Assembly: GCA_020536535.1 (NCBI GenBank) | Contig: JAHLWZ010000347.1 | Span: 20,600 to 84,599 of the forward strand | DNA from: Pelomyxa schiedti | Lineage: Eukaryota; Protista; Evosea | Reading direction: 5' to 3' | Length of the DNA stretch: 64,000 nt | Shown: positions 12,172-59,560 of the stretch, piece after piece | How the letters are laid out: each line of letters starts with the position of its first letter | Numbering within the stretch: the stretch's first letter is position 1 | Made by a program: the position numbers and the translations under genes | The notes under the pieces: model-generated | Told to the model about the DNA's origin: nothing | Databases searched by the model: none | Seen by the model: only the letters and a program-made list of their open reading frames with translations

Positions 12172-12358
12172 TTTATCGAGGATGTCGCCCCAATTTTTAT
12201 GCCTTATGGCTTGTCTTTGTTAATTTCTTTTGATTTTTCTGCTTCTTGGCCCTGAGTTGGGTTTTTTGGTTTTTTTTTTCTCGTCTGGCGTGTCTGCCCC
12301 ACTCGACAACAAACAAAGTCTTGTGTGTTGTGGTTGTGCAGACGTAGTTTGGTGGAGG
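12172..12358. promoter_or_regulatory. Probable bidirectional promoter between BRE1 (-) and RNF213-like copy A (+)
   Basis: Head-to-head ATGs at 12171 (-) and 12359 (+), only 187 bp apart, with T-rich tracts. Inferred from geometry only. Confidence 0.4.
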
Positions 12359-21300: not shown

Positions 21301-24300
21301 GCTTTCACCAACATTCTGAACAGTTAATAACCGAAACAAAACCTTCCTTTTCTGCAGAAACTTACCACTACTCACCGGATCTTCTCTCCCCCACCCAAAT
21401 TCCAACAGCACATTTGCCTCTTGAGTTTCTCTTATATCACATTCTGTTGAAATTCATGCAACCATCAAAGGAGGATAAATTCCCTCAAGTATTGGCAATC
21501 AACACCCTGGAGGATGCTTGGAACATACTTATAACAGTTCCAAGAGGTCCAAGAGGTACCCACAAATCACAGAACCCCTGTTTCACTCACTCTCATTTAT
21601 CAGAAGGAGAACATGTTTTAAATCAAGTGAAGAAAGCTGCCAGCAGGACCATTCTTCTTGCACTCCTTGCTTCCACTCTGAGTGGGCAGACTGGGCTTTC
21701 TGCACGACTACACAAAATTAAGCCAGAGATTGTGCAAGTTGTTTCACAGGTATTTTTTGTTTTGTTTTGCTTTGTTTTAAGTTTCTTCCATATTCAGCTT
21801 CTCTCACGTGGCTCGAAAATTGTTGTAAATGCCAGAGGATTCTTCCTTGGTCAGATCTCAGAAGAAACTTTCACATCACTTCTCCAAGACCATGACGCTT
21901 TGGGCCTTTTAGGTCTTGAAGACATGTAATCTTCTTCTAGTTCCTTCGTTCCCTCTATGTTTAATGTAATCCTGTTCAGGAACAGTAAACCTGGAGCTCA
22001 AAACGCCACAGCAAGGCGGACTGAAGCTATGACAGTTCTTCCTTCGTGCATTCTAGGTGGTGGTGAATTCTATGACCTCATCCAGACCCAGAGCAAAAAA
22101 CTTTCATCCACAGGACTTCTTGCCACGTTCTTGCAACAGGCCCCTGTGTTGAGAGTCTTCTCACACCTGCCCACTTTGGTTCATTTTTACCATATGTTGA
22201 ATTTTGTGTTTGCACCACTGATGAAAGGTTTTTTCCTCTAATTCCTTCTTCTTGATATCATGATCCCACTCAGTTTGTTTACAGAAAATAGAATTGTTGG
22301 CTCTTTTTCTGAGTGCGTTGAATGGGTTGGTTTCAACTCCCCAGCAAACAAGGCGTCCATTTGTTCAGCTTACCTGAAATTTCTGGATGCTTGGAAGGCC
22401 ATTCTGACGGGATTCAATGATGTAAAACTCAAGTATAACTCGGTGCTTATTCTTCCTCCACTCAGTGCACCTCCCCTTTTTCCAGCATAAAAATAACGGA
22501 GATTGGACCCAACACCCCATTTTTTGAGTTGGTGAGTTGGAAAGATGAGAGACAAGGGGACCTTCTTTTCACTGTCATCAGAACAATGACTGAAATTCAG
22601 AATTCACTGATTCGACTCAGGAATGAGTGTGACACAGGTGAGGAATGTCTCGTTCTTCGTTATCGTCTAAGAATGCCCTCAGACGAAATCAACCCTTTTG
22701 GATTCATTTTTGAACAATCATCTCACTCAAGCTCTTATAATGTTGATGCCATTCCGAACTCAACTTCTCTTCGTTCGTTTTCTTTTTCCCTTTTCAATTA
22801 AGAATTCCCAACATTTGGCTATGAGGCTAACACTTGACACCACAGAAATTTTAGTCACTGGAGGTCCTGTGGAGGATATTGAAAGAAGTCTTGTGACCCA
22901 TTGCCAGATCCCAGCCAATGGGAAAAGATGTGACTTGCATTTTGATGCCAACAGACTTCAGAGACATGTAAGCAAGTTTCCTTCTTCAGTGTCTGATTGA
23001 CGAAACGCCACAAACAGGTGATTGAGCGCTATTTGGCAGGGAAAGCCATGTTGACTGATGTGGAGAGCATGAGAACAGTGTTTCCTCTTGACATCCTTGA
23101 CATCACAGCTGACCAAGTTTCCACTCACCCCAACAAAACTTGTTGTGATCACTTTGCTTTTTTTAGCAGCCCGAACCCGAGCGGAGTGAAGGCCAGGATC
23201 AACTCGATTTTTCTCTTCAACAGCAGTTAAATAGGTTGCCAACCGTGTCCTCTCAACCCAGTGGCTGTCTTTCTCCTTTGCATTTTTGGCCTTGATTTTT
23301 TTTTTGTTATTGTGGTGGTGCATTTTGTGTTTATTAACGTTATACTAGATTGCACCCAGACTACCAGCAACCGAATCACAGTAATTACTATGCTCAGTTT
23401 GAAAGAGCTCTCAAAGGTTGTTTTCACATGACACTTTCCTTTGTCAAATTAATTTTAATCCAGGAGAGACTGAGGAGCACATCAGAGAATTGATGCAGCT
23501 CCTGACACAGCTTCTTGAAAATCTGCAGCGTGCTTTACGTCAACAACCCTCTGAAAATCAGCCGGACTCCTATCTTGGATCAGTGTGGATGCACCTGTTA
23601 CCTTCCAAGGTGATGCCAAATGCCCTTACACCCCTGAGGAACCAGCGTTTTTGGTGCATTGGTGTTGTTGTAATCAACGTTTTGACCAAATACCGAGCAA
23701 AGCAGTGGTTGTTTGCTGGAATGCCAGACAAGTATGACATGGCTCCCCCTGAATCTGTTCAGACCAATTTCTCAAGGAAAGTGGAAGAGGTATGGGTGCA
23801 CCCTGAAAAAAACTCACTGTCGGATTCTCCTCACAACTTCTCCCTCAAAAAAAAGATACTGAAAGGAACAATTGAGGTAAAACAGCGCATGCGTGCAGTG
23901 GCAAATGCCATTGTTGGATTTTTGAAGCTTGAGAAACTGGGTTCAAACCAGGAATGTGCACTAAAAACTCTTTTTGGTGATTACTCGGCAGTTGTATGGC
24001 TCCTCGTTTTATTTTCCTGCCCAGATTTTGTTGGGCTCAAGCATGCAACAACATCCCACAGGTGACAGAAACTGTTTTGCGAGAGGACATAGAATCCTTG
24101 ATTGGAAACTTGAGAGTCGGAAATTATTGTTATTTAATGCGGCAACTTCATACTCTATCCAGTGCTCTGCTTGTTGCCATTGCCAATGTCAGTTGTTCAT
24201 TATCTCTTTTTTTTTACGATTTATTTGCTTAAAATGTCTCCAACAGCACGCTTCAACAGTCCCAGCCAATGAAGTATCATTCAACATCCGTTTCTGTTCA

Positions 24301-27300
24301 CTCATTAACATAGTATCACGAACCTGTCGAGAACTTGCAGGTGTCTGTGCTTCCACCACCAAAACCAGTCGAAGAAGAAGAGAAAACTCTTCCTTTCGAA
24401 ATTTCTTGGCACAGTATCGAGCTCCCTGGTAATTCTTTTTTTTTGCCTATGAAAGATTAAAACCCCATACAGAACCAGACTTGCAAACTTCTGTTCCAGA
24501 TGGTACTCCGATTTGTACCGGGCCGCCTCGGCCCAATCCGCTTCCGTCAGACAAATACGATGTTATCTCACATTTTCCAATACCACCGAGTACTCTCAAC
24601 ATGTCTACTACCTTCAAAGCTATTCCAGGAAAGAAATTTTGTATACACCCTTGTGATATTTCTTCTTTCTCTCCTATGAGTGGGAATAAAGACAACACAG
24701 AACCTGACTTGCAAGCCTCTGCATTAGAGTGTGGGCTGAATTTATCTGGATCACATGAGCCCACACCAAGTCAGAACCCTGCAAATCCCTCTTTTGAACA
24801 TAAAATTGTTCCCCCCCTGCTTTCTCCGCATCTCTCTCTAAAAACACTTTCCCAAGCTATGCTTAAGGCAGTGGAAGACATATCAGTGCAGGTCAAAGAG
24901 GAAGACAATGACTTCCATATGTATCTGGAAAACATGAGAAGCAACTACCAAACCATGACTCAGACAGTTGCAACTACACAACAGAAAGCAACAAGGATTT
25001 CGAGTTTTGTGGAGCACTACAGCTTGTTTATGGAAAAGATGAAGAAACCAAAAAAAGTTATGGAAATAACTGAACTCCAGCTGCAGGTGGTCAGTGATGA
25101 AACTTTATTGGCCATGCAGAGGCAGAGAATGGGGCTTCTACTTCAGGAAGTCTCACATCACTGCCTGGAGATGGTAGTCTATGACCCACTAGAAGTGGCC
25201 TCCATTTTGACAAAAGTGGAACAATATACCTTGGAAGCAAACGAGATCCTGGGGTCAGTCCGGGAGATCACATCAAACATGCAATCTGCAGCCATGGAGA
25301 CAGATACCCAAAGAACCATGCTTGAAGGAGATCTACAACTCATTGTACATGAAATCGATCAGCTATTGCCACAAGAGGGAAATGAAGCCCTAAGATTCCC
25401 TGACTGGCGACAGGTTCCCCAGAAACAGGACCCACTCAGTACCACAACCTACGGTACCACACACGACTTCCCTCCAACAAGTTCCAGCACTATCCAGCAG
25501 CGGTTGGAGGAGGAAAAGCAAAGGGCTCTGAAGCAGCAAGCAATTGCACTTGAAGCTGGCAAGAAAAAAGAACTTGAAGAACAGGCCATCATACTCAACG
25601 CAGAAAAGCAAAGAGCACTCGAACAGCAGGAATCTGCCCTCAATATAAAAAGTGCAAAAATACACAATGAGAAAAAACTTGCGCAACAAGCATATACCCT
25701 GGCTGTGGCAAACAACCTGGAAATTAACCTTTGTGGATTCCAGAAAGGAGTTATGGCTCTTGTAGAACTGAACGACCTAAGTCTAACTAATGCCGTCTGT
25801 ATTGCTAATGGGTCATTTGGGGCAGTGTGTAAAGTTCCTGTACTCCCACAACAGTGGGGGAGTGTTACTGGTGTACAATGCGGTGTGACTGCACCCTTAG
25901 CAGAGGTTGCATTGAAGATGATGTTCAATTTCACTGCCGGAATTAGAACCCTGCAACAGAGGACACAGTTTGAAAGGGAGTATGAAGTCTTAGTCAGGTA
26001 CCCACATTGGTGCTTCACAAATGTGTTCAACCACTTCCGCGGTGATACCTCCTTATCCCTGGTCAAGGAGAGCTTGAGAGGCAATTATGCAATCGTGGAT
26101 GAAAAACGCAATTGGGTGTCAGGGTGCAGTGACACCAGGACCGCCATTCCGGTGTTTCAGCGAACCACGTTCATGACCATGGAGCTTGCAAAATTCACTC
26201 TGGAATCCCTCATTAACTGTCTCCAGGAACCACATCAGGAACAGCAGCGTAGTTCTCCAAAGGGAACCCCAGAACCAACCAACCCATGTTACATGGTACC
26301 TCCACTCAGCAAAGTGGCAGATATTCTTCAGTTGGCGTTTTGCGTGCTGTGTGCGGTTGACCACCTCAACACGCGAGGGTGGTTCCACTGCGACATCAAA
26401 TCTGACAACATCCTGCTGATGGAGAGGCCACACATCAAAGGAAACATCTGGGCTCTCTGTGACCTCGGAACCGCTGTGTTCTGCCAAGATGGGAATCCTC
26501 TAGTTTTGCCCAAGGGCGAGACGTTCACTGGAAATGGACCAAACAGGTCACCTGAAGTGATCCAGGCGCACATCACAGGCAAGTTTCCTCTGCTCAAAAA
26601 CGATGTGTGGGCCGTCGGCTGTGTTCTCTACGAGGCCATTTCCAGGACTCACCCCTTCTTTCAGCAAAATGACCTCAACACCAACAAGATATGTGACACC
26701 AACCTCCCTCCCCTCGTCCCTGATCGTTCTTCTCTCGCACCCGACGCCGCCCACCCCAACGGTACTGCAAACAACTCAACGGTGTCGGGGCTTGTTGGAT
26801 GGCTCCTGGAGCGGGAGGCCGCACGCCGGCCCACGGCCCGCGAGGCCCTCCTCGCCTGCGGTGCACTCGTGTCGCTCCCCCAGCCCCTCATCGCCCAATT
26901 CCTCGCCCATCTCCACACCAGCAACCAACCTCAGCAGGACTCATCCCGGACTGCACAACGCAATGCAGCAACAATCCCACCCCCACAGAATTTCCCGGCA
27001 CCACCATCAAACCTGGTCCCACCACCATTGGGACCGAGCCCACAGCAGCACCAGCACACACCACCACCACAACAAACAACAACAGCAGTACCTGAGGAAC
27101 TCATCAGGTGCATGAGCAAGGCAGTTCACAAGGCACACAAGCACACCGTGACTGAAATCTTCCAACGCAACGGGCTGCGCTTTGGTGTTGATGTTGTTCC
27201 CATACAATCATCAGCATCAGCAGCAACAGCATCTTCTGGGAGCCCCAACACCATGCAAGCAACCGTGAGTGAAGTGATGAGGCTTGTTTATTGCAACATG

Positions 27301-30300
27301 GCACTGCGTGACGTGCCTGATGCCGCTCGTTCTCTGTTCTCTTTCCTCAGTGCTGTCTCATCTCCCCGTTACAACCTCAATCTGCAACTATCCTGATTTT
27401 TGTCGAACCAGGAAAAAAAAATTGAGTCTTTTTCGACAATACTTCAACACAATTCTTTTTGAAAACAATGCTTGGTGCTGGGAGTGAACTGAACCAACTA
27501 TTCTTGGTGTTTGGGCATGTACCTTCCTGATTCCATCAGAAAGATCGGCACTGTAAATCAATCCCAGGGCTTATGCAAGGCTATGTCAAGCTCGACCACA
27601 CAAATCTTGCATCACCTCTGAAGAAAAGAGTTAAAACCTGTGATCTCGCACTCTTTTAGGCATTCAGCAATTTTGACCTCCTGCTGAGGAGGGCTCACTC
27701 CCAGGCCTTCAAGTGAACAAACTTGGTTTTTACCTCAGGACCGGTTTCTACTTTTTGTTTTCGTAAATCAAAAAACTGGTGAGGAGTTGCACCGGCGTAG
27801 CTCGGTGGAGAATGACTTCGGTACCACCGCACTTCATTCGGCCACGTGCGTGCGAAAAATAAAAGAGGTCTTTCTTACATAAATGACGTGTGTCGACAGA
27901 CGTGGACTCAATATGGGAGAACGGATGTTTCCGCAGTCGCTTGCGCTGTCACAAAAATGGTGAATCGCTTGCAGTGGTTCCCCCAAGAAGTGTTGACCAG
28001 AAAACGCAACCTGTTGGGCTTTCCATTCAAGAAATGAACAATGTTTTCAGGTGTGCACTCATTGTCTCATTGTTTCTTTCTTTTGACAGAAAAAGTCTTG
28101 AGGGAAATTCACTGAAGTTGGTGGAGATACTTGGAGTGGCCATGGTAAGAGTTCACGGAAATCTCTTTTAGCTTTTAAAATGAAAACTGGCAGCAAATAC
28201 ACAGAACACGTCTTGAATTGGAAATCATGGGTCACCCACATTTCCAAGGAAATGATGATCTTCTCAATAAACCTGGAGAGTTGATGAACATTGAGATTTT
28301 ACAAGCTTTGCACACTTTGGTTGACTCCTCCTTTACTGCAAGAACCTGACCACAAATTCAAAATAACCAGTTGAAGCAACAACTTGCGGAGTGGAAGGAA
28401 CTCATGGTTGAAGTGTACAACAGGCAGCCTCGTCTCAACTTCCTCTCTGAAAGACAACTCACAAGATTTGGGGCTGCACTCACAACAGTGGCAGCTGAAT
28501 ATGCCTCTACCCCACAATCAGCCACCCACAAGGTTCAGACTCTCACAGGGCCATACCTCTGGGCATGTTTCCCTGATGTGGAAGCCATTCCCCCCGAAAC
28601 GGTGTTGCAGTGCCTGACGTCGGCAATCGTTGAAATTGGAGGGAGGCCTGAGCCAGTGCCAGTGGTCGAGGGTGCTGCAACAGTTGTGGTTCCCCAAGGT
28701 GCGGCTGTCTGCTGGAACCCAGTTTCATTGGTGAGGCTCGTGCTCTGCTTTGTCACTCAGGTTGCCAATTTGAAGGCGGTTCAAGTTAAAGCGGCAGGAG
28801 GTACAAGCGCCACAACATCGGACAACTCGCAAGACATCGTTGTCCAGCTTGCGGAAGGGTTCACTCCCAACGCACTGATGCATCTGCTTTTCGAAAACTT
28901 TTCATTCCAAAAACCACATCCATCAACGATCCTGCATTGCAAGAATGCGAACAAGTCAGACCTCGAACGGTTTCTTCGATGCATCAGCGGTTTTCCACAC
29001 CTCACATTCGCCATTGTGGGTGTGAATGAGATGACGGATGAGCTCAGGCAGGAACTACTGTACAAGTGGTCCTCCAAAATGGCCACCCAAGACAGACCAA
29101 AAGCAAAAACTTTCCTGATCTTCACCTCCCGTGTTGGAATTGGTGCTTTCTCCAACAGTATCGTCAAGCAGCAGACAGTGGTGTTGGAGGAGGTCAAAGT
29201 GAGAATCGCAACATCACCTCTGAATCCCCAACAGATCATGGAGAACGCGAAGGCAAGCGTGGTGTGTTATTCTGGTGGTCCTGGCACTGGAAAAAGCACG
29301 GAGATCAGGGCAAAAATGGAACAGAGCAAGAAGAACTTGGAACCACTGTGCATCAGCATGACTGAGTGCTTTTCCATATCTGACGCGATTCCAAAATTGT
29401 CCCCTCTGTTGAAAGTAGCGAGTGGCGCTGAGGCAACTCCCTTCGTCGCCAACGTTCACTTTGACGTCAGTGCTTATGCTGACATGAGTGTTGTTTCAAC
29501 CTTTTTTTACAACATGCTCATGTGGAGTGTTGTGTGGGATGCTGAGACAGGTGAGATGGTTCCCATTTATCGGGAAAATCTCAAATGGAACTTGTTTGTT
29601 GAGCTGGCAGCTGCACCACCTTCTGATGCTTTGGAAGGTTTTGGATTTGAGAGTACCGAGCTTGTGTTACAGAACATCCCCATCCTGAAACATGTTGGAT
29701 CCTTTGTAAAGCAGTGTGGGATCCCATTTGTCGTGGATAACAATACTTTACTTGTTTCGAAGTTCTTGCAAGCAAATAAGAAGAGCCTTCTTGATAACCC
29801 CACAGGGCTTGTGGCAGAACTCGATGCCAATCCTCTCTCCTTTGATCTTGTGGCAGTGCTTGAGGATTTCTTCCATTCCAGCAGCAGTCCTCCTGCGGGC
29901 TTCAATCTTTTATCACTGTCCACAGATCGAATGCTTCAGCAACGCTTTGTGTCTCTGCTTGCAGATCGGTGCAAATGGCTTTCAGTTCATGCACGCCAGA
30001 GATTGACACTTTTCAATAGTTGTGAGCTGGCCAACAACCTCAGTGGAACAGTGCCCATCAGCAAACTCTTCCAGATGTTTGTGGAAGAGAGCCACGTTTT
30101 GTGCAACCCACCTCTTGGCTCTGAGCAGTTCATTTACACTGCTCGTGAAAAACCACCTCCTCATAGAAAAGATTCAGTGGTGGTGATGCAGCTGCCAATT
30201 GTCATACCAGTCATGGAACATGTTCCCCCACAACTTCCAGTTCCAGGAGAGTTTGTCCTCCCTTTAGCAGGGGCCGTTGAAGACCCAAGGTTACTCCGAC

Positions 30301-33300
30301 AACAACTGCAACTGACATTTGGAATGGAGAACATTCAGGAAGTCATTGAGAGGAAAAAGTACATCCTCACACCAGATTTTGCACTGAAGATGTTGCTTGT
30401 TTATGACCACATGAACGCCGGAACCAACCTCGTCATTTCTGGAGGCACTGGAACAGGCAAAACGGAACTTCTTGATGTCTTTGGCACCCTCCTCAACTCA
30501 AGAACGAAGTTGACACCCAACTTGGTGTCCAAGACAAATAAGTTTGTGCTCGGAAAGATGCTCAGCAGCATCCCAGCCATCCCCAAGCCTTTGTTGATCC
30601 AGTGTCGTGCCATCCTCCAGGGGCAACCACAATCCAAAGTTCCCCAAACACCTTTGAAAATTGTGACCCCCAAAAACGCACTTTCAAACACCTGCTGCCT
30701 CGAGTGGTTGGATGACAATGAGTTTTTCCGCCAGTTTCTTCTTGGAATGCTTAACGCCCACATCAACCTTTTCCCCCAGTTCGCAAGCAGGATTGTTCAA
30801 TTCTTGAAGAACAATTTGATGAAACGCAGGTACATATCCCTGAATGATACTGGCAACCTGTCCAGAGTTTTGGATGACACTCTTTGTCAAGTGTGTTGTG
30901 TGGAAAATAATATCTTTATTCTCACCAGGACATACAGCCAGAAGAAAACCCAAAAGCGGAAAATCGTGTTGTCCACTACATAGAAGAGCTTGCTGACCTT
31001 GTAATGTCGTTCAGAAAAGCCAAATTTGAGAAGGTTTTCCACAAGATTCGCATGCACAAAGGACTTTCTACAGCTGAATTCAGAGAAAGGATCAACGAGA
31101 TAAAGGAAACACTCACAAAATTCCCTAAAGACACCAAGGTTGTTTGCTTCATTGATAAGTGCACATCCACAACAAGCCTGCTTGGAATTGTGAAGGAAGT
31201 GCTGTGTGATTCAAGGTTGGATGGAGAGCCACTTCCCAAGAACCTCTTCTTTGTGGCAACACTCAGCAATAACCAGCCCAGTATTCCTCCACCCGCGGTC
31301 AATAACACCAGGTGTCAGGTGGAACTGGTAGCTTCAGTTCAAAACCAGATTGACTTTGTTGGAATTGCCAGCAAGTTTGGGACCAAGTCCTTTGCAGTGA
31401 GACCACCGCCCCTCTCCATGGAGAAGATGACTGTAAACTTCGGCAAGCTCACAAAACAGCAAGCAGAGAGTTTCACATGGGTCTTGATACTATCTCACTT
31501 GAAGGATAACCCTCATTTTGATAGAAACTGTGCAAAACAGTTGACGTCACTTGTCTTGTTTGGTCAAGACTTTATCAATAGTGCCAAAATCCACCGTGTT
31601 ACTGCCAGCATCCGAGACATTGCTCGAGCCGTGGATCTTTACCTTTATTTTCTCCAACATAAACAGTTCATGTTCAACTTGCCCCATCCTTCTGCTTCAA
31701 ACTACAGTACTCACGTTCATTGGCAAGCAATGGTTGTCCCCTCTAACTTTATTTTTTCTCCCTCTTTCTGTTGTTTGACACTCACAAAAGGCGATCTCGA
31801 TTGCAATGACATACTACTTTCGACTCCCATCAAAGGATTTCATGGAGCAGCAGAAAAGAGAGTCCTTTCGAGCATCCCGAACCATAACACCTTGTACAAG
31901 GGACGAGTTTCAGGATTCCCTTCTGAAGTTCATCATCAGCAACTTCAACAATGCCCCGGAATATCTCATCATGTGGGATGATTACTTCAACAAGGGTGTC
32001 CTGAACTCCTTGTGCAACAACACGCACCTCCCACCTGGAATTGCCAAGACTGTTGCTTTCATGGAGAACTTGTTCTGCACTGTTGTTTGCCTCGATGCCA
32101 AGATTCCACTACTGATTGTTGGTCCACCGTATGTTTCTTCACAGTTCCTCAACTTTCTGTCTAACTTTACCCAGTGGTTGCTCCAAGACACTCATTTTCA
32201 AGGTTGCTGTTGACAACATGAAGGGACAGACATCCCCAAAAGGGTTCTATCGGGCTTTGCACCATGTGCATGCATTCCAATACCAATGTAGTGAGCAGTC
32301 CACGTTCATAGAAATCAAGTCTGTTTTCAAATATGCAATTCATAGGCAAAAAACTTTGCCTGTCGATTCCCAAGAACTGTGTGCCGTTCTTTTTGACGAA
32401 GTGAGATTGCCCAATGAAGAAAAATATCCATTGGAGGTGTGGAACTCTTTGTGGTTATCAACCAACTTTCAACAGATTTCAAACATCCACCTTGATCACA
32501 AAATTTCTTGTCTTCTTCTGTCAAGAAGCATTCTTGACGAGGCTATTACCAATCGAACATTGATGCTGTTGGAAAGTGAACCACCACTCACTGATTTGCA
32601 GACTTTGGCTGAAGGTTTGGGAAATAGTTTCAACTCTTTGTAACCCAGAAATTGCCAGGGTGTATATTTGGGAGTGATACAAGTATTGCTTGGGGAACAA
32701 GAGAAGTCCTTGGAGCACTTTGCACAGCATATCAGGCAGAAGTGAGCAAGATTTATGGGTCACCTTACCCAGCAAGGTTCTTCCACCTCAGAGACTTCGT
32801 CTATTTCCTCCGTTTCCTTGGAAAACACTGTTCAGGAAACAGAGCAGGGGATGCTTTCCACATTTCCCACGATGTAGTTCTTTCTGGATTGCGTCGAAAC
32901 TTCGGTGGATTGGTTCAGAGTGACTTTGACAAACTTGTTGCGAACTTTTTCGACAACATCAACTGGGCACTGAAAAAACATGCACAACCATTATGGACAG
33001 CCCCTGCAGCTGACCAACGAAGAACAGAGATTTCCTCCATCAAGGAGAGCCTGGCAGAGAGACTCACTGATGCCGATGACCCAAACACTGCCCCGTTCAG
33101 ATACATCATGCTGGTGTGTGGTCCTACTTGTTTAAAATTAGAGGCATCCCCTAATCATTTCAACAGCTCGATCCAACCGACAATGAAGTTGCAGTCTCTT
33201 TGCTCTTTGACTTGGGACTGTGTGACCACAACCAAACGAGCGTGTGCTGTATTGGGGATTTTCGTGATGACAGTGACCTTAGAGCGAAAGCAGCAGTGGT

Positions 33301-39300: not shown

Positions 39301-42300
39301 AAAGATCCTGAAAGGAACAATTGAGGTAAAAAAGCACATGCATGCAGTGGCAAATGCTATTGTTGGGTTTTTGAAGCAAGATAAACTGGGTTCAAACCAG
39401 GAAATTGCACTGAAGACCCTTTTTGGTGATTACTCGGCAGTGGTATGCCTCCCCAGATTTTGTTGGGCTCAAGCATGGACAGTTTCCCAACATCCCACAG
39501 GTGACAGAAATTATTACACGAGAGGACATAGAATTCTTGATTGGAAACTTGCGAGTCGGAAATTATTGCTACTTAATGCGGCAACTTCATACTCTATGTG
39601 GCAGTCTGCTTGTTGCCATTGCCAATGTCAGTTGTTCATTATCTCTTTTTTTAAGATTTATTTGCCTCAAATGTCTTCAATAGTACGCTTCAACAGTCCC
39701 AGCCAATGAAGTATCATTCAACATACTTTTCTGTTCACTCATTAAAATAGTATCACGAACCTGTTGAGAACTTGCAGGTGTCTACGCTTCCACCACCAAA
39801 ACCAGTTGAAGAAGAAAAGAAAAATCTTCCTTTCAAGATTGCTTGGCACAGTATCGAGCTCCCTGGTAATTCTTTTTTGCTGCCTATGAAAGATTAAAAC
39901 CCCATACAGAACCAGACTTGCAAACCCTTCCAGATGGTACTCCGATTTTTAGAGGCCCCCCTAGGCCCAATCCACCCCCGTTAGACAAATCCGATGTTCT
40001 ATCAAATTTTCCAATACCACCAAGCCCTCTTGCCAGACGTGCCCAATCGATGCTGCAAGAAGTGGAAAACATTGTGGCACACTTTAAAGAAGAAGAAGAT
40101 AATTACCTCATGTACTTAGGAAATATGAGGGACAACTTCCAAGCAATGTCTCAGATGGTGACAACGCTCCAACAAAGAATTACAAGCCTAGAGAGATTAC
40201 CAGAGTACCCCAACTCGCTTGTACAAAAGGCGAAGGAACTGCAAGACCACCTGAAAATAGCAGACACCCAAATACAGATGACAGACGAGACAACAATGAA
40301 ACAGCACAAACATCGGTTGGATCAAATTCGTGATGAAGCTTCCCATAAGTGCTCAGAGATGACTAACTCCGTGCTGGCTGCCTCTGGTGACCACACAATA
40401 CTTATACCGCTTGAGAAGCAAGTACAAGAGTACCTAGTGATAGCAAGGAATATCCTGGAGACAGCCCAGTGTCTTGCATCAAACCAGCAGAGTGTAGCAA
40501 TTGAGATGGATACACAGAAAAATACAGTGGAAGGAATCGTTGACGAATTTGAGCAACTATTGCCACAGCTGGAAGAGGGGGCCAATCCAGCCCTGAGATT
40601 CCCCCGCTGGGCTCACCCGAAACCGTGCCCACCCCAATCCACAACCTGCGGTAGGCCAAATAGCTTTCCTCAAATTAGTTCCCGCATTGTACTTCAGAAC
40701 TTGGAGGAGGAAAAGCAAAAGGCTCTGAAGCAGCAAGAAATTGAACTTAAGGAACAAAATTTGAAGGCACTCGACAAGCAAGCAAACGCACTTAAAGTTG
40801 TGAAAGAAAAAGCACTTGAAGAACAGGCAGTCATACTCCATGCAGAAAAGCAAAGAGCCCTTGAAAAGCAGGAAGCCGAAATGAATCTAAAAAGGACAAA
40901 AATACACAATGAGAAAAAGCTCGTACAACAAGCATATACTCTGGAAGCGGCCAACAACCTGGAAACGGTACTCTGTGGATTTCAGAAAGGGGTGATGGCT
41001 CTAGGAGAATTGAACGAACTTAATCTAACAAATGCCGTTTGCATTGCCAATGGGTCGTTTGGGTCTGTGTGTCAAGTCCCTGTGCTCCCACAGCAATGGG
41101 GCATGACGGTGCCACCCTCAGAAGTTGCATTGAAGATGATGTTCAATTACACTGCTGGAATGAGGACCCTTCAGCAGCGCACCGAGTTTGAAAGGGAATA
41201 TGAGGTCTTGGTTATGTATCCACACTGGTGCTTCACAAACGTCTTCAATCACTTCCGTGGTGAGACTTCCTTATCCCTGGTCAAGGAGAACCTGAGAGAC
41301 AAGTTCGCAATAATGGATGCAAACTCCCACCAGGTGTCAGGGTGCAATGACACCAGGACCGCCATTCCGGTGTTTCAGCGAACCACGTTCATGACCATGG
41401 AGCTTGCAAAATGCACTCTGGAATCCCTCATTAATAGCCTCAAAAGTCCACAACAGTACCAACAATCTGGTCCACCAAAACATGGAACGAAGGGTACCAG
41501 GGAACTCCCCAGTCCTTCCCTTCCCCAATCATCTATCCCGCATCAACAACAACCACTTTGTACAACGAGGGATGTGCTTCAGCTTGCTTTTTGCGTGCTG
41601 TGTGCAGTTGACCACCTCAACTCGCGCGGGTGGTTCCACTGTGACATCAAGTCTGACAACATCCTGCTGATGGAGAGGCCACATATCAAAGGAAATATCT
41701 GGGCTCTCTGTGACCTCGGGGCCGCTGTGTTTTGCCGAGACGGGAACCCTCTGGTTTTCCCCAAGGGTGAGACGTTCACTGGGAATGGAGCAAACAGGTC
41801 ACCTGAAGTGACCCAGCCCCACATGATCGGCAAGTTTCCTCTGCTCAAAAACGATGTGTGGGCCGTCGGATGTGTTCTCTACGAGGCCATTTCCAGGAGC
41901 CACCCCTTCCTTCAGCAAAACGAGCTCAACAAGCACAAGATATGTGACACCAACCTCCCTCCCCTCGTCCCTGATTGTTCTTCTCTCGCACCCGACGATA
42001 CCAACCCAAACCCGCGCTTCCCCAACAACGTGACAGTGGCCGGGCTTGCTGGATGGCTCCTGGAGCGCGAAGCCACCCGCCGGCCCACGGCCCGCGAGGC
42101 CCTCCTCGCCTGCGGTGCACTCGTGTCGCTCCCCCCGTCCCTCATCGCCCAATTCCTCACTGAGATCCAGCACAACGCCAGCAATCAACCGCAGCAAGAT
42201 TCCACCCCGACGACACATCGCAATGCAGCAACAATCCTACCCACTGCATCAGTGTCACCACCACCACGCCAATCCCAATTTCCGGCACCACCACCATCAA

Positions 42301-42700
42301 ACCTGGTCCCACCACCATTGGCGCCGAGCCCACAGCAGCACCAGCACACACCACCACCACAACAACAACCACAACCACAACAAACAACAGCAGCAGTACC
42401 TGAGGAGCTCATCAGGTGCATGAGCAAGGCAGTTCACAAGGCACACAAGCACACCGTGACTGAAATCTTCCAACGCAACGGGCTGCGCTTTGGTGTTGAT
42501 GTTGTTCCCATACAATCATCAGCATCAGCAGCAACAGCATCTTCTGGGAGCCCCAACACCATGCAAGCAACCGTGAGTGAAGTGATGAGGCTTGTTTATT
42601 GCAACATGGCACTGCGTGACGTGCCTGATGCCGCTCGTTCTCTGTTCTCTTTCCTCAGTGCTGTCTCATCTCCCCGTTACAACCTCAATCTCCTGGACTC
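12340..42700 (+). repeat. Tandem segmental duplication with a unit of about 15.4 kb (copies A and B)
   Basis: Homologous sequence recurs at an offset of ~15.3-15.5 kb from the first exon (12359 vs 27812) to the last (~27380 vs ~42690). Some antisense ORFs in the track are identical between copies (27104-27304 and 42412-42612). Confidence 0.95.
12359..27396 (+). CDS. Giant RNF213/mysterin-like AAA+ protein fused to a C-terminal PINK1-like kinase, copy A (about 4,500 aa estimated, multi-exon)
   Basis: RNF213-like motifs in order: EW..ALTEVYKKHPRLNFLSPIQL; GGSRSGKST; VISGGIGTGKTEL; IPLVIVGP|TGCSKT; AVLFDEV; FFHLRDFVYFLR; GLRRNFGG; AMEKGDTIVLVN...SLYDVFNRYY; VHDNFRVI; LLSRFEKY; CTD-like VIERYLAGKAML. 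The 44-nt intron at 24429-24472 joins IELPE|PDLQTS in frame to the kinase ORF 24481-27396. A 1-nt frame anomaly near 13100 needs splicing rescue. Confidence 0.83.
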
Positions 42701-42719
42701 TTGTTTGTGTGATGTGTAA
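27812..42719 (+). CDS. Giant RNF213/mysterin-like AAA+ protein fused to a C-terminal PINK1-like kinase, copy B
   Basis: Collinear paralog of copy A with matching intron positions: GGPGTGKST, GGTGTGKTEL, GP|PGCSKT, AVLFDEV, ITNR, LLSRFEK. The same IELPE|PDLQT junction (~39870-39910) leads into kinase ORF 39918-42719 (NGSFG, VALKMMFN, HCDIKSDN, DLG, SPE, KNDVWAVG). Confidence 0.87.
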
Positions 42720-44270: not shown

Positions 44271-44474
44271 GCAGCTTGAACCCTTTTTTCCTCACTGAGT
44301 TCCTACAAAAAAAAAACGGAAAGCTGTTTAAGTTTCTTTTGTTTCTACAGAAGTTAAAATGGGAATACAAGCAAAACCAGGGAAACTAAGCAAACTAATT
44401 CTAGTGAGGCGAACAGTTTTAGGGTTTGGGCAAGTATCTTCATGATTAGATCTATAAGGTATGAGTCGTTAGGA

Positions 44475-47400
44475 ATGTCATCGTGGGGTGTTGGAACTTC
44501 CAAGGCTTCCACAACGCTGGTAAGTAGCCTTCTGTCAAGCTGCACACGGTGTTAGCGGTTTTGTTTGGTGAAGAGAAATACAGCACACCTGCCACAATGC
44601 CCACCTGATGCCCTGCCTGAGAACTTCTTCATGAACACTCGGCCTGTTGATACTTAGAAGATTCTGAATGCTTGTAGATGTCACTAACCTTGTTGGTGCC
44701 ACTCGCGCAATCGAGGCCAAGATTGAAATATCCTGGTCTGAAGATACTGATGCGAGCCACGGAATTGGCCCAGCAGCATTGATGGCCTCGTCTGAGATTA
44801 TGGGGTAAGATTTGACCTGAATGGAAAAGAGAGGCAGTAGCTTCGTCGTCCCCTGGGTCGAGGTTTCTGTGGCCGTGACAGTGCAACTTGTCGTGATTTA
44901 TCACGTGCCACTTCAATTCTTCATCTCTTTTCAGTATTGCTTGCAGTAAACGAGCCATTTGCAAAATGAAACCAAACAAAGGCTTTTCTTTACAGAATTG
45001 AAAAATGCATAGCTGGGGCCTCGCTTTAAAAGAGCCAGGAAAAAATGTCCCGACAGTGAACGTGGCACTGGCATCCGTTGCACCCACGCTTTTTTGATTG
45101 GGTGTTCGAAATCTGAAGAGAGGGAAATGCTTCTCCCGTGGTAGATATGACACCTTATGGTGCTTAGACAGTACTTTCTGGAGATTCTGGGCTGGAACCC
45201 AGATTCCAAGGAGTACTTCGTGGAACGTGATCTGGTCTTTTTCGAAACCGTTCAAATGCAGAACGGTGGCAAAGGGGGAGTGGGACCCTGTCAACACCCA
45301 GAGGAGGCAGCAAGGGCCTTGTATGACGTCATTGTCTCCATTCCTGTAAAAATAACAACTGCTGTGGGCGTCCAGCCCCCTGCACGGGCGAGCCCTGGCG
45401 GCGTCCCACAATCCGCTCCAACAAGCGGCCGCGTTCTCGCGGTTGCGTTGGACAGGAGCTTCACGGCTGATGTTGTGCGCCTTATGGAGAATTTCTGTGA
45501 GACCAGCAAGCGAGTCAACCACGCTGGGTTTGACACTCACGTGTCGTGGCTGGCTGGGGGGCTTGTTTCGGCAGTCCGCGGAGTTGACATTATGGGATGC
45601 GAGGGATCCAAAAGTGGCCAATCGCACCTGTTTGACAACTCACCTTTCTTCATTTTCATGGCACTTCGTCTTTTGGAGTGTGTTTACTTCCTGCTCCTCT
45701 TTTCCTTTTTCTAAAAAAAACCCACAACCAACAGAGAAGTCGGGAAATTTGGGATTGAAACAGAACAAAATCTTTCACTGTTGAATGAAGTTGTGTCAAC
45801 CACTGTTAAAAAGGTATTTTCTTGTGAAACAGCACAGGATTCTGCCGTCTCGGCAAAAGATGCGAGTATTACCTCGGTATTTCCACCATTCTTTGGCTTT
45901 GTTTCACCTTTCCCTTTTTTATTGGCAGCTTCTGGGAGCCCTTCGTCAAGGAAACTCCATTTTGTTTGATGAAGTAACTAAGCTTCTGGATAACCGTTGC
46001 ACCAATACGGTTCTATTGCAAAAAACGTTTTTTCACTATGTGTGTACATTGAAATTGTGTGTTTGTTGACAATTCTTTTTTATCTGAAACTGCAGCCTGA
46101 AAATGAACTCAAACTCCAAATTTTGTGTGTGGCCTTTCATTTTGAGAAAGAACGCAAGGATGAGATGGAAGAGATTCCCAAGCCTCTTTGTCAGCAGGTT
46201 CTTTCCTCATGGCACGACTTTTTCCTTGAACAGTTCATTCCAAGAGTATCAGTCCAAGAGTTGTGTAACTTTGTCACCAGGTAGCCTCCTCTCTGATACC
46301 TTTCCGTTGTTCCTACTAACATTTAAGACAGACCACCAGTTCTATATAGGCATCTTTCGTCAAAGATGCCCCCCAAAATGGCACTCAGCACATTGCAAGG
46401 AGCAGTCAATTTGTTTGAAAGAGTGATTAAAACAAAAGCAGATCTTGCTGAAGAAACCCGGGACCTTGCAGTCAGCAACATTTACTGGGTCTGTCCTGGT
46501 GGCTTTTCAATACAATTCCCAAGAAAGATCTCACTAGAAGCACTCAAAGTTGCCCTTTTTTTTTTTGTTTTTTTGACTCACTTTTAAATCTTTTTTTTTT
46601 ATTACCAGGAACTGATAACATGTTACCATAAAATGCTTGATCTGACATGTCCGGCACCTCGGGATTCCAGAGAAAAAGGGAATCCAAAAAGGATGGCAAC
46701 TTGGTGGTATTGGTTGGAATGGATCATTTCATCCTTAAACCTGGAAAAATCTCCTGGTGGAGAGGCTGAGGGCCACTTCTTTATTTCAAGTTCTGCCTTA
46801 AGACAATGTTTACTAGCCCCGTTTTGGAAGGTTTGTAACCCCTGCACTGACAAGTCTTTTGTCTGATTCTTGGGGTGTTTGCAGAGAACCCAGCAGTATG
46901 GACTACAGGAGGTTCGTGGTGCAATGCATCCAGACACAATTGGATTCTTTGACCAAGCAGCAATAGACTGCGGAACTAAAAACCGATCTCCCCTGGATGA
47001 TATAATGTCTCTTGTGCCAGAAGGGAGCCCACAACCTTCTGCGGAAAATTTATGGCAAGCAAAAGTTAAACACCTCGAGGAAGCTCTTTCTACAAGTAAT
47101 ATGTCCTTCAATACTCCATCCACTATTAAGTATGCGTAAAGATCGAAGGAAAATGTTTTGTCTCCAGGGAAAGAATTTGGAGATGGCTCTCACTGTATTC
47201 CAGAAAGGAGTGCTGGAACTGGTGGAACTGGACGAAATACGTGTTGATAAAGCTGTTTTCATTGCCAACGGTGCATTTGGAAGTGTGAACAAAGTTCGTG
47301 TTGCCTTCCTTGACCAAAGAAGGAAACAAGAGGGACCTGCTCTCGACAGAGCGCCCAAAGAGGTGGCGTTGAAGATGATGTTCAATTACAACGAGGGGCC

Positions 47401-48712
47401 GAGGACAGTGCAACAGAAACCGCATTTTGAAAGGGAATATGAAGTTGCGGTGATGCACCCACACTGGTGCTTCACGAATGTCTTCAACCACTTCCGCGGA
47501 GACACCTCACTCACCTTAATTGGGGAGAAGTTGAGAGACAAATTTGCACTCATCGATGAAGATGGCAACTGGATATCTGGGTGTAAGGACTGTGCCCATG
47601 CCATTCCGATCTATAAGCGAACCACGTTTATGACCATGGAGCTTGCAAAGGGCACCCTGCAGTCACTTATACTCTCTAAGTTCAAGTCTCCAGAGCCACA
47701 GCAGGAAACACTAGGTAGAAGTTCAGAGGCAGTTGCTCTTCAACAACATGCACTTTGTACAACGAGGGATGTGCTTCAGCTTGCTTTTTGCGTGCTGTGT
47801 GCAGTTGATCACCTCAACTCGCGAGGGTGGTTTCACTGTGACATCAAGTCTGACAATGTTCTGCTGATGGAGAGGCCACACATCAAAGGAAACATCTGGG
47901 CTCTCTGTGATCTCGGTACCACTATTTTCTGCCAAGACGGGAATCCTCTGGTTTTGCCCCCAGGTGAAACGTTCACTGGAAATAGACAAAACAGGTCACC
48001 TGAAGTGATCCAGCCAGACGTTCCCGGCAATTTCCCCTTTTTCAAAAACGACGTGTGGGCCGTCGGCTGTCTTCTCTTCGAGGCTCTTTCCGGCAGGCAC
48101 CCTTTCCTTACCACAAACGCTTTGAACACCCCCCTGATACGTGATGCCAATCTCCCTCCCCTCATCCCCAGGCACAGCACCAACTTCGTTCCCAGCAACA
48201 GCCCTCCTGTTGACTTGGATGCAGCAGCATCAGGGCTTGTTGGGTGGCTTCTTGAGCGGGAGTGCAGCCGGCGCCCCACCTCACGCGAGGCCCTCCTCGC
48301 CTGCGGTGCACTCCTCTCGCTCCCTCTCCCCCTAATCGCCCGGTTCCTTACCGAACTCCACCGCCAGCACCCGCGGCAACCCGCAGCACCACCCCCTGGT
48401 TCCGCGGCGGCCCCCGCGGCGCCCATTCGCCTGCCGGCGGAACTTATTACGGAACTGCGGGAGGCTCTGTACAGTGTGCTTGAAACCACCGTTGCTGGGA
48501 TACTCCAGAGCAACAACCTCCAAATTGACACGGACGACGTTGTGCAGTTGACCGACGGAAGCACAGCACTTCAAGCAACAGTTGCTGAAGTCATCAGGCT
48601 TGTTTATTGCAACATGGCCCTGAGAGACGTGGTTGGTTCCGCACGCACTTTGTTCGCATTCCTCGATGCAGCCTCATCCCCTGCTTACAACCTCAACCTA
48701 TTGTTACCATGA
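44475..48712 (+). CDS. PINK1-like HCD kinase paralog C with an unrelated, unrecognised multi-exon N-terminal region (5' end and kinase junction uncertain)
   Basis: Kinase exon ~47168-48712: IANGAFG, VALKMMFN, FEREYE, HCDIKSDNV, CDLG, NRSPEV, KNDVWAVG, LLERECSRRPTSREALL and the same C-terminal extension as A and B. Upstream same-strand exon-like ORFs (45157-45714, 45997-46284, 46366-46587, 46633-46866, 46870-47139) are flanked by GT/AG sites. Confidence 0.7.
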
Positions 48713-58506: not shown

Positions 58507-59560
58507 CTAGAGGTTAACTGATGCAGGGAACACCCTCCCTTCCAATCTTCCACACCAATTGTCGTAGGTGGATCTCAGGATTGTTCTTAATCGACGGTGT
58601 GATGCAACTTCGAGGAATGAGAGTAACGCCTCGCAGGATGAATCAGCCTCGAGGAGGCCCATAACAAGCGGATTTGGAGGTCCCTGCACCGACGGCGCGC
58701 ACTGGCGCCCTTTACGTGCGTGAGGAATGGCGATTGTGGGAGGGACAGGAGCGCGCCGCAGGCCAGGAGTGCCCCGCGGGGTCCCGCTCAAGCCACCCAA
58801 CAAGCCCGGCCATTATGGGACCCGAGTGACTGGTCACGTGCACTTCCGGTTCTTTCAGGGGGAATAGAGCGGCTTCCCATCTTGGAAAAACTCTGTGGTA
58901 CCAAGGTCACAGAGAGCCCAGATGTTTCCTTTGATGTGTGGCCTCTCCATCAGCAGGATGTTGTCAGACTTGATGTCACAGTGGAACCACCCTCGCGAGT
59001 TGAGGTGACCAACTGCACACAGCACGCATTTTGCTAAGTGGGTTCTGCTGTGAGCTCCCTGTGACTGAAGTGGTATGAGAGGCAGAAGTTGCCCCTGCTG
59101 AAATTGGTGGGTGTTGCCTGTTGTGTAATGATGAAATGACCGACTGCAGCGTGCACTTCCCGAGTTCCATTGTCATGAACGTCGTGCGTTGAAACACTGG
59201 GATTTGCTCCTGAGCGATTGTGCACTCTTTCCCTAAGGCATCTCCAAGTTGTTTCCTTGAAGAAAAAGAATGTCCTATGTTCTTTCCACTTTGGAACCTT
59301 TTGCAGGTGTTTCTATCCACTTTTACTCATGGATTTACTCACTTGGGGAAATTGTTTGTTCAAGGTTCTCCCCTCCCACTGGAGGCCTTTTCTGGCTCGC
59401 TGCAGTGAAACGCAGAGTCAAAGAATTCGCAGCTCCGTGGTCCTGCACTCTCCACCATGCAACGAACTTCGCGCGGCGTCGTGAGTTGTGGCAGCTGGCG
59501 GGAGTGTTCATTGTCCACAACCGTCGCTCATTTGTTGGAGAGAGTGAAACTTCTTTGTTC
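58507..59560 (-). pseudogene. Decayed copy of the PINK1-like kinase gene (paralog D)
   Basis: Retains IPVFQRTTFMTMELGKCTL and CVLCAVGHLNSRGWFHCDIKSDNILLMERPHIKGNIWALCDLG. The N-lobe (Gly loop, VALK, alphaC) is absent. There is a frameshifting deletion near 59030, an in-frame TGA after ..KPLYSP, and the C-lobe is fragmented. Confidence 0.78.

What the first reader, a model, noticed from the sequence alone, without database searches (positions are those of the whole stretch)
25790..27396. The kinase family at this locus matches PINK1 motif by motif but has an HCD (non-RD) catalytic loop
Correspondences with human PINK1, recalled from memory: ALKMMFN vs AIKMMWN; a ~35-aa insert before QRTTFMTME..TLESLI vs insertion 3 before GRTLFLVMK..TLRQYL; DIKSDNIL vs DLKSDNIL; GNGPNRSPEV vs GNGCLMAPEV; KNDVWAVG..YE....HPFF vs KADAWAVG..YE....NPFY; LLEREAARRPTAR vs LLQREASKRPSAR; plus a helical C-terminal extension. 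Differences: the RD arginine is Cys (HCD) in all four copies, and the residue aligned with PINK1 Ser228 (after NxxAG) is I/M/P, with a Thr two residues downstream. Established: non-RD kinases are enriched among pattern-recognition receptor kinases, and insertion 3 helps PINK1 bind ubiquitin. Ubiquitin-kinase activity is therefore plausible but unproven.
Basis: partly seen in the sequence, partly recalled or inferred. Interest (0 to 1): 0.75.

Follow-up and report, generated by a model that had tools for sequence, protein, structure and literature searches.

The report
PINK1-like kinases lacking the RD arginine
The anaerobic amoeba Pelomyxa schiedti has a multi-copy family of intact kinases whose nearest known relative is the Parkinson's-disease kinase PINK1; they form a separate, undescribed sister branch without several of PINK1's control features, so they are relatives, not copies, of PINK1.

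Summary
The window (Pelomyxa schiedti contig JAHLWZ010000347.1) carries three intact copies and one broken fragment of a kinase. The catalytic loop reads HCD in all four copies, and the PINK1 Ser228 position is I/M/P with Thr at +2.

The PINK1 kinship is real:
- A family profile ranks all 12 PINK1 sequences in the PDB first (E 7e-20 to 2e-15); the next family is at 7e-11.
- Profile-profile alignment to PINK1 gives E 2e-50 over 384 columns, including the C-terminal extension.
- A confident model (pLDDT 85) matches PINK1 structures best (Z 25.5-30) through that extension.

The family is not inside the PINK1 clade. It lies in a separate clade (support 100/100) with other Pelomyxa, Paratrimastix and metagenome proteins. 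None of its 46 members has the RD arginine (Leu, Cys or Met instead). It also lacks insertion 2, Ser228 and the mitochondrial anchor. Pelomyxa has a different gene closer to canonical PINK1.

Catalytic residues are intact and dN/dS is about 0.3. Paralogues carry LRR, ankyrin, Sel1, ARM or actin modules in front of the kinase. Ubiquitin-kinase activity is untested. This scan had already noted the family on other DNA of this genome.

The parts
24859..27396 (+). Copy c1, probable whole gene (845 codons): acidic coiled-coil N-terminal part, then kinase and C-terminal extension
   Evidence: The open frame runs 24481-27396. The ATG at 24859 is homologous to the start of annotated copy c2, P0001. This exact product is not on record, so the start is inferred.
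25789..26922 (+). c1 kinase domain (residues 1-378 of the stretch analysed)
   Evidence: Pfam Pkinase E 3e-21. PINK1 is the top PDB hit. The AF2 model has pLDDT 84.9.
25906..25950 (+). VALKMMFN (catalytic Lys43), then NFTAG-I52-R53-T54. I52 aligns with human PINK1 Ser228; T54 aligns with Ser230 (TcPINK1 Ser207).
   Evidence: Alignments. Across the clade, Lys43 is in 41 of 42 filled rows; position 52 is variable; position 54 is Thr 33 and Ser 5 of 42.
26047..26160 (+). Insert of about 38 residues between beta4 and beta5, at the position of PINK1 insertion 3. It ends in the shared R-T-x-F motif.
   Evidence: hhalign. The model shows a helix and three short strands here with pLDDT above 90. Sequence likeness to PINK1 insertion 3 is weak.
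26386..26409 (+). Catalytic loop HCDIKSDN: Cys201 in place of the RD arginine, Asp202, Asn207
   Evidence: This position is never Arg in 46 clade members (Leu 19, Cys 13, Met 9).
26461..26556 (+). Activation segment from DLG to SPE, with the LxLP and GN motifs shared with PINK1
26923..27093 (+). Pro/Gln-rich linker, predicted disordered. It is specific to c1 and c2 and shorter in c3.
   Evidence: pLDDT is below 50 at residues 407-423. Alignments.
27094..27396 (+). Helical C-terminal extension (helices at residues 436-460, 475-483, 493-507, 509-523) and the stop codon
   Evidence: It aligns to the PINK1 extension in hhalign. Structural alignments run to PINK1 residues 566-574. pLDDT is 90-98.
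40050..42719 (+). Copy c2, the annotated single-exon gene (P0001, 889 aa); kinase from 41031
   Evidence: Exact match of P0001 to the window. The annotation calls it as a gene separate from the upstream 2595-aa AAA-type gene.
44442..48712 (+). Copy c3, an annotated multi-exon gene (P0021, 1125 aa) with a different N-terminal part; kinase at 47249-48709
   Evidence: Pfam finds only the kinase domain.
58689..59224 (-). Fourth copy, a degraded fragment in three frames: 59224-59126, 59040-58858 and 58778-58689. It has no N-lobe and most of the C-lobe is missing.
   Evidence: tblastn and the ORF list. The piece 58868-59028 is 90.7% identical in DNA to c1.

Best explanation
These are real genes under purifying selection. 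They encode catalytically competent Ser/Thr kinases of a previously undescribed non-RD sister family of PINK1.

Shared with PINK1 (shown):
- the KMMxN motif after the catalytic lysine
- a structured insert between beta4 and beta5, at the insertion-3 position
- the LxLP and GN motifs of the activation segment
- the helical C-terminal extension packed on the C-lobe

Missing compared with PINK1 (shown):
- the mitochondrial presequence, membrane anchor and N-terminal helix
- insertion 2
- the Ser228 autophosphorylation switch
- the RD arginine, which is Cys, Leu or Met throughout the clade

Mechanism (inferred):
- The kinase plus extension works as a C-terminal output cassette.
- It needs no activation-loop phosphate to neutralise an RD arginine.
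- It is controlled instead by the variable N-terminal module it is fused to: coiled coil in these copies; LRR, ankyrin, Sel1, ARM, FKBP, MSP or actin-like domains in paralogues.
- The conserved insert and the conserved Thr/Ser at the start of helix C (position 54) form the likely substrate or partner-binding surface.

The tandem duplication, the pseudogene and the diversity of fused domains fit a fast-expanding sensor-kinase family, perhaps for cytosolic surveillance or symbiont handling. That last step is speculation.
For: Genome and gene models:
- The genome is Pelomyxa schiedti, assembly GCA_020536535.1.
- dN/dS among c1, c2 and c3 is 0.29-0.34.

Catalytic competence across 46 clade members:
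- Lys43 in 41 of 42 filled rows; Glu64 in 40 of 42.
- Asp202 in 44 of 46; Asn207 in 42 of 46; DFG/DLG Asp in 40 of 46.
- The Pro and Glu of the APE motif are invariant.

Kinship with PINK1:
- The family profile against the PDB puts all 12 PINK1 sequences first (E 7e-20 to 1.7e-15); the next family, AAK1, is at 7e-11.
- hhalign against 22 PINK1 orthologues gives E 1.9e-50 over 384 columns, through the extension.
- The control against bacterial PknB-like kinases gives E 1.7e-27 over 241 core columns only.
- The AF2 model has pLDDT 84.9.
- In VIA-align the 15 best chains are all PINK1 (Z 25.5-30.0, 325-355 residues aligned up to PINK1 residue 574). The next are BIKE and AAK1, at Z about 25 with 270-280 aligned.

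Separate clade:
- The careful ML tree gives the non-RD clade 100/100, metazoan PINK1 100/94, and the ingroup against the outgroup 99/96.
- The quick tree of 109 rows agrees.
- The RD position is never Arg in the 46 members.

Other points:
- No hydrophobic segment or presequence-like N-terminus.
- Paralogues carry actin, Sel1, ankyrin, LRR_6, ARM, FKBP and MSP domains in front of the kinase.
- The family also occurs in Paratrimastix pyriformis and in metagenome contigs.
Against:
- The outgroup was limited to 10 assorted kinases and 4 bacterial ones that surfaced in the same profile search. No reference kinome was included, so 'sister to PINK1' rests mainly on similarity ranking against the PDB and on the shared extension.
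- The PINK1 plus PINK1-like grouping has only 85/88 support.
- The AU tests were run under a simpler model with searches that had not converged, and are not decisive: p 0.006-0.053 for a clade made of PINK1 and the non-RD family alone; p about 0.1 for joining the Pelomyxa family with the long-branched Pelomyxa PINK1-like gene.
- AlphaFold may have learnt PINK1 structures, so the modelled packing of the extension is not fully independent evidence.
- The sensor-kinase reading rests only on domain fusions and gene-family dynamics.
- The gene model of c1 was not recovered.
Confidence: 0.7

Rival explanations
1. The family works like PINK1. Whatever its clade, the kinase with its insertion-3-like insert phosphorylates ubiquitin or a ubiquitin-like domain (Ser65-type), delivered to targets by the N-terminal modules instead of a mitochondrial anchor. 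This can be true together with the best explanation.
For: - PINK1 is the nearest known kinase.
- An ordered, conserved insert sits exactly where insertion 3 does, ending in the shared R-T-x-F motif.
- The LxLP and GN motifs of the activation segment are shared; TcPINK1 Leu371, needed for substrate phosphorylation (PMC5679756), falls in LxLP.
- A conserved Thr/Ser aligns with an autophosphorylation site seen in TcPINK1, Ser207 (PMC5679756).
Against: - Ser228 (Ser205 in TcPINK1), required for ubiquitin and Ubl phosphorylation in TcPINK1 (PMC5679756), is I/M/P here and variable across the clade.
- The aligned Ser207 was dispensable in that study.
- The sequence of the insert is barely alignable to insertion 3, and the human Gly309 position is Gln, Lys, Asn or Ser.
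- TcPINK1 Tyr375 and Lys382 are not conserved.
- No substrate test or co-fold was possible.
Confidence: 0.17
2. The genes are true PINK1 orthologues or recent in-clade paralogues that watch over the amoeba's mitochondrion-related organelles.
For: - PINK1 is the best match by sequence and by structure.
- The AU test could not reject joining the Pelomyxa family with the Pelomyxa PINK1-annotated gene (p about 0.1).
Against: - The family sits in a separate 100/100 clade shared with Paratrimastix and metagenome proteins.
- A different Pelomyxa gene, KAH3759533.1, is much closer to PINK1 (E 8e-24).
- There is no presequence or membrane segment.
- Insertion 2, Ser228 and the RD arginine are all missing.
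- There are dozens of paralogues fused to unrelated domains.
Confidence: 0.06
3. They are pseudokinases or scaffolds: the loss of the RD arginine and the DLG variant mark a dead enzyme kept for binding.
For: - The catalytic loop is unusual (HCD) and some copies have DLG instead of DFG.
- A few clade members lack single catalytic residues.
Against: - All residues needed for phosphotransfer are present in c1, c2 and c3 and are conserved across the clade.
- Non-RD kinases as a class are active (established knowledge: Dardick and Ronald 2006; Johnson et al. 1996).
- dN/dS is about 0.3.
Confidence: 0.05
4. The likeness to PINK1 is generic or convergent; the family belongs to another kinase group such as NAK or STE20.
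For: - The Foldseek E-values of PINK1 and PAK4 are close.
- BIKE and AAK1 reach Z 25.
- The Atlas feature search returned only generic kinase clusters.
Against: - PINK1 leads every other solved kinase by 20-30 bits.
- hhalign scores 396 against PINK1 and 208 against a generic kinase control.
- The PINK1-specific C-terminal extension and the KMMxN motif are shared.
- The ingroup branch has 99/96 support.
Confidence: 0.03

Closest known systems
PINK1 (PTEN-induced kinase 1; human, Tribolium and Pediculus structures such as 5YJ9, 6EQI, 7T4K, 9EIH)
   Same: - Kinase core with the A/V-x-K-M-M-x-N motif.
- A long insert between beta4 and beta5, ending in R-T-x-F.
- The H-x-D-[IL]-K-x-D-N-[IL] catalytic loop and a long activation segment with LxLP and GN.
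- KxDxWAxG, LLxRxxxxRP, and a helical C-terminal extension that packs on the C-lobe.
- Best hit by sequence, profile and fold.
   Different: - Separate clade (100/100).
- Cys, Leu or Met instead of the RD arginine.
- No Ser228 and no insertion 2.
- No mitochondrial presequence, membrane anchor or N-terminal helix.
- Many paralogues with varied N-terminal domains.
- c1 and c2 have a Pro/Gln-rich linker before the extension and an extra disordered loop after helix D.
Pelomyxa schiedti KAH3759533.1, annotated 'PTEN induced putative kinase 1' (P0129)
   Same: - Same organism.
- A PINK1-like domain that is also non-RD (HQD).
   Different: - Its C-terminal domain is far closer to canonical PINK1 (E 8e-24 against 6e-11).
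- It groups with the PINK1 clade (85/96, on a long branch).
- It has an ordinary second kinase domain in front.
Non-RD kinases of innate immune receptors (plant XA21/FLS2-type receptor kinases, IRAK/Pelle relatives; Dardick and Ronald 2006, from my own knowledge)
   Same: - No arginine before the catalytic aspartate.
- Family expansion and tandem arrays.
- Fusion to LRR and other ligand- or protein-binding repeats in paralogues.
   Different: - A different kinase group: those are TKL/IRAK-type, this family is PINK1-type.
- Cytosolic, with no membrane segment.
- No evidence here of any immune role.
NAK family kinases (AAK1, BIKE)
   Same: Next-best solved structures and sequences after PINK1.
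   Different: - 20-30 bits lower by profile.
- About 55-75 fewer residues aligned structurally.
- No KMMxN motif and no PINK1-type extension.

Membership tests
PINK1 | PINK1 is the nearest characterised kinase by sequence and profile | tested here: met
   PDB phmmer gives E 6e-11 against 3e-8 for the next family. The profile gives 7e-20 against 7e-11. hhalign gives E 1.9e-50 over 384 columns.
PINK1 | Placement inside the clade of PINK1 orthologues | tested here: not met
   The careful tree puts the window copies in a separate 100/100 clade; metazoan PINK1 is 100/94. The quick 109-row tree agrees. The AU tests under LG+F+G4 are not decisive.
PINK1 | HRD catalytic loop (RD kinase) | tested here: not met
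   HCD in all four window copies. The position is never Arg in 46 clade members.
PINK1 | Autophosphorylated serine before helix C (human Ser228, Tribolium Ser205), needed for ubiquitin recognition | tested here: not met
   I, M or P in c1, c2 and c3; variable across the clade. A conserved Thr/Ser aligns with Ser230 (TcPINK1 Ser207) instead.
PINK1 | Insertion 3 between beta4 and beta5, forming the ubiquitin-binding site | tested here: inconclusive
   An insert of about 38 residues sits at the same place, ordered in the model. Its sequence is hardly alignable and the Gly309 position is not kept.
PINK1 | Insertion 2 after helix C | tested here: not met
   In hhalign the PINK1 block falls opposite a gap in the family.
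PINK1 | Helical C-terminal extension packed on the C-lobe | tested here: met
   hhalign aligns it. The model has four helices with pLDDT 90-98. Structural alignment reaches PINK1 residues 566-574. The packing comes from a prediction.
PINK1 | N-terminal mitochondrial presequence, membrane segment and N-terminal helix | tested here: not met
   The N-terminus of the annotated c2 product is acidic. The highest 19-residue hydropathy is 0.7-1.1. Pfam finds nothing there.
PINK1 | Phosphorylates Ser65 of ubiquitin and of the Parkin Ubl domain | not testable with these tools
   No assay or co-folding tool was available.
Active eukaryotic protein kinase | Catalytic Lys, helix-C Glu, HxD Asp, Asn, DFG Asp, APE Glu | tested here: met
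   All are present in c1, c2 and c3 and conserved across the clade. Pfam Pkinase is above the curated cut-off.
Non-RD kinases | No arginine immediately before the catalytic aspartate | tested here: met
Non-RD kinases | Coupled to pattern-recognition or sensor domains | tested here: inconclusive
   Paralogues carry LRR_6, ankyrin, Sel1 and ARM modules. The window copies have only a coiled-coil or unknown N-terminal part, and no ligand is known.

The most novel reading that the evidence does not exclude
The non-RD clade is an ancient sister of PINK1, older than the split of Amoebozoa and Metamonada. It keeps ubiquitin/Ubl-directed kinase activity and serves as the output of cytosolic sensors (LRR, ankyrin, Sel1, giant AAA+ proteins). 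That would make it a phospho-ubiquitin signalling or immune system in anaerobic protists, independent of mitochondria.
Probability: 0.1. Interest if true: 0.85.

Novelty: new variant of a known kind. Interest (0 to 1): 0.55.

Why it matters
PINK1 is treated as a one-of-a-kind kinase: its insertions and C-terminal extension are described as unique (PMC5679756). I know of no described sister family, and the paper searches here found none.

This family shows that the kinase-plus-extension cassette also exists without the mitochondrial anchor, without Ser228 and without the RD arginine. It has been reused many times behind different binding domains.

That gives natural variants for two questions:
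- which PINK1 features are needed for ubiquitin recognition;
- how the ubiquitin kinase arose.

It also flags a large uncharacterised signalling family in anaerobic protists.

The practical weight is limited until a substrate is known. No paper searched mentions the family.

Tried and rejected
- The first AF2 run, with only 9 sequences, gave pLDDT 50 and was discarded.
- Foldseek E-values did not separate PINK1 from PAK4 or DCLK1; VIA-align did.
- The AU test in treekit under the mixture model did not finish. Full IQ-TREE searches timed out on one CPU. I used fast or unfinished LG+F+G4 trees, so those p-values are rough.
- The IMG/VR scan found only generic giant-virus kinases, best E 5e-13 and C-lobe only.
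- The scan of bacterial and archaeal genomes could not run, because the alignment had no conserved stretch long enough.
- The Atlas feature search gave generic kinase clusters.
- Exact look-ups of two candidate c1 products failed, so the c1 gene model is inferred from c2.
- Paper searches for PINK1 with Pelomyxa, NKF2, non-RD or protist kinomes found nothing relevant.
- I considered and rejected a dead kinase, a generic kinase and a true PINK1 orthologue (see the rival explanations).

Full report
**What is there.** The window belongs to Pelomyxa schiedti. Paralogues carry Pelo_ names, and copy c2 maps exactly to contig JAHLWZ010000347.1 of assembly GCA_020536535.1. A long open frame at 24481-27396 (+) ends in a protein kinase domain (Pfam Pkinase E 3e-21).

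tblastn with this domain finds three intact copies and one fragment:
- c1: 25789-27393.
- c2: 41031-42716, 75% identical to c1.
- c3: 47249-48709, 54% identical to c1.
- A degraded fragment on the minus strand at 58689-59224, broken over three frames. It has no N-lobe and most of the C-lobe is missing.

c1 and c2 lie in a 15-kb segmental duplication: 12343-27383 matches 27796-42691 at about 80-84% DNA identity. dN/dS among the intact copies is 0.29-0.34.

**Check of the observation.**
- The catalytic loop is HCD in all four copies, the fragment included.
- The residue aligned with human Ser228 is I, M or P, with Thr two positions later.
- By the alignment to TcPINK1 that Thr corresponds to Ser207 (human Ser230). 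This is an autophosphorylation site seen in the crystal but not required for ubiquitin phosphorylation (PMC5679756).

**Is the PINK1 likeness more than generic?** Yes.
- A profile of nine family members against all PDB sequences puts all 12 distinct PINK1 sequences first (E 7e-20 to 1.7e-15). The next family, AAK1, is at 7e-11.
- Profile-profile comparison of 46 family members with 22 PINK1 orthologues gives probability 100%, E 1.9e-50 and 384 aligned columns. The alignment runs from before the glycine loop through the last helix of the C-terminal extension.
- The same profile against bacterial PknB-like kinases gives E 1.7e-27 over 241 core columns only.
- With the 46-row alignment AlphaFold2 gives pLDDT 84.9 and pTM 0.87. 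A 9-row alignment had given only 50.
- In VIA-align the 15 best chains are all PINK1 (Z 25.5-30.0, 325-355 residues, model range 1 to about 526-535, PINK1 residues up to 566-574).
- BIKE, TNIK and AAK1 follow, at Z about 25 with 268-280 residues.
- Foldseek alone barely separated them.

**Where it differs from PINK1.**
- hhalign shows PINK1 insertion 2 opposite a gap.
- The insert between beta4 and beta5 (residues 87-124) is at the insertion-3 position and ends in the shared R-T-x-F. Otherwise it is hardly alignable, and the human Gly309 position is not kept.
- Ser228 is absent.
- The RD arginine is absent from every one of 46 clade members: Leu 19, Cys 13, Met 9, others 5.
- The N-terminal part of the annotated c2 product is acidic, with no hydrophobic segment. 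There is therefore no sign of PINK1's presequence or membrane anchor.

**Phylogeny.** The exhaustive profile search returned four kinds of hit:
- a first tier of close paralogues;
- a second tier of non-RD proteins, comprising more Pelomyxa proteins with HLD or HMD loops, Paratrimastix pyriformis KAJ4457529.1 and metagenome proteins;
- canonical PINK1 sequences from molluscs, cnidarians and fish at 57-82 bits;
- generic or multi-domain kinases.

The careful ML tree had 75 rows and 404 columns under LG+C20+F+G4 PMSF. It gives:
- ingroup against outgroup, 99/96;
- a non-RD clade of 36 rows, 100/100, on a stem of 0.56;
- within that clade, the Pelomyxa HCD group (100/99) as sister to the Pelomyxa HLD/HMD group (the two joined at 99/95);
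- metazoan PINK1, 100/94;
- a looser PINK1 plus PINK1-like grouping, 85/88. It holds Oscarella 'PINK1-like', a Gefionella protein, and Pelomyxa KAH3759533.1, which is annotated as PINK1.

The quick 109-row tree agrees. KAH3759533.1's C-terminal domain hits PINK1 structures at E 8e-24, with the next family at 5e-7. It, and not the window family, is therefore the organism's closest PINK1 counterpart.

The AU tests under LG+F+G4 used searches that had not converged, and they are only indicative:
- A clade made of metazoan PINK1 and the non-RD family alone costs 21-37 log-likelihood units (p 0.006-0.053).
- Joining the Pelomyxa family with the long-branched KAH3759533.1 is not rejected (p about 0.1).

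The outgroup was limited to kinases that surfaced in the same search. 'Sister family of PINK1' therefore rests on the tree together with the PDB-wide ranking and the shared extension.

**How it probably works.**
- Shown: all catalytic residues are present and conserved. The family is under purifying selection.
- Shown: the kinase-plus-extension cassette is always C-terminal. It sits behind very different modules in paralogues: actin, Sel1, ankyrin, LRR_6, ARM, FKBP, MSP, or a second kinase.
- Inferred: a non-RD loop removes the need for an activation-loop phosphate. Control then comes from the N-terminal module or from clustering.
- Inferred: the conserved ordered insert and the conserved Thr/Ser at the start of helix C form a substrate or partner surface.
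- Untested: whether the substrate is ubiquitin. The loss of Ser228, essential for ubiquitin phosphorylation in TcPINK1 (PMC5679756), argues against a simple transfer of the PINK1 mechanism.

**Context.** The annotation calls c2 as a gene separate from the upstream 2595-aa AAA-type gene.

**Novelty.**
- No paper searched links Pelomyxa or non-RD kinases to PINK1.
- Earlier notes of this scan had already flagged PINK1-like kinases in other parts of this genome.
- This report adds the clade structure, the clade-wide loss of the RD arginine, the missing insertion 2 and Ser228, the retained extension, and the presence of the family outside Pelomyxa.

Noticed in passing
window 12343-27383 and 27796-42691: A 15-kb segmental duplication at about 80-84% DNA identity (69% over one short piece). 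Each unit carries a giant AAA-type gene (2595 aa in unit 2), a small gene and a PINK1-like kinase gene. The shared gene order is therefore not independent evidence of a functional link.
   Followed up: partly
P0129 (KAH3759533.1, Pelomyxa schiedti; not in the window): The protein annotated as PINK1 in this amoeba has an ordinary kinase domain (residues 249-461) followed by a PINK1-type domain with an HQD loop. Even the amoeba's closest PINK1 counterpart is therefore non-RD and is fused to a second kinase.
   Followed up: partly
L001-L003 (metagenome contigs carrying P0039): A family member with an HLD loop sits among ankyrin-repeat genes, an AIG1-like GTPase and many small ORFs with no family match. 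The source organism (protist, giant virus or symbiont) is unknown.
   Followed up: no
L004:233-5568: Another metagenome family member (P0041) lies next to a Roc-COR-kinase (Roco) gene, which suggests an amoeba-like eukaryotic source.
   Followed up: no
window 42972-44270 (+): An annotated cyclin gene (Cyclin_N and Cyclin_C) lies between kinase copies c2 and c3.
   Followed up: no
window 56916-57476 (-): An ORF of 186 codons is rich in repeated Met-Gly-Gly-Met-Pro/His units, an unusual low-complexity Met/Gly-rich protein.
   Followed up: no
hit list: 43 of the proteins examined (mostly among the best 150 hits) contain two or more kinase domains (up to 7 matched stretches, lengths up to 7165 aa). 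Their rank comes from summed scores, not from closeness to this family.
   Followed up: no
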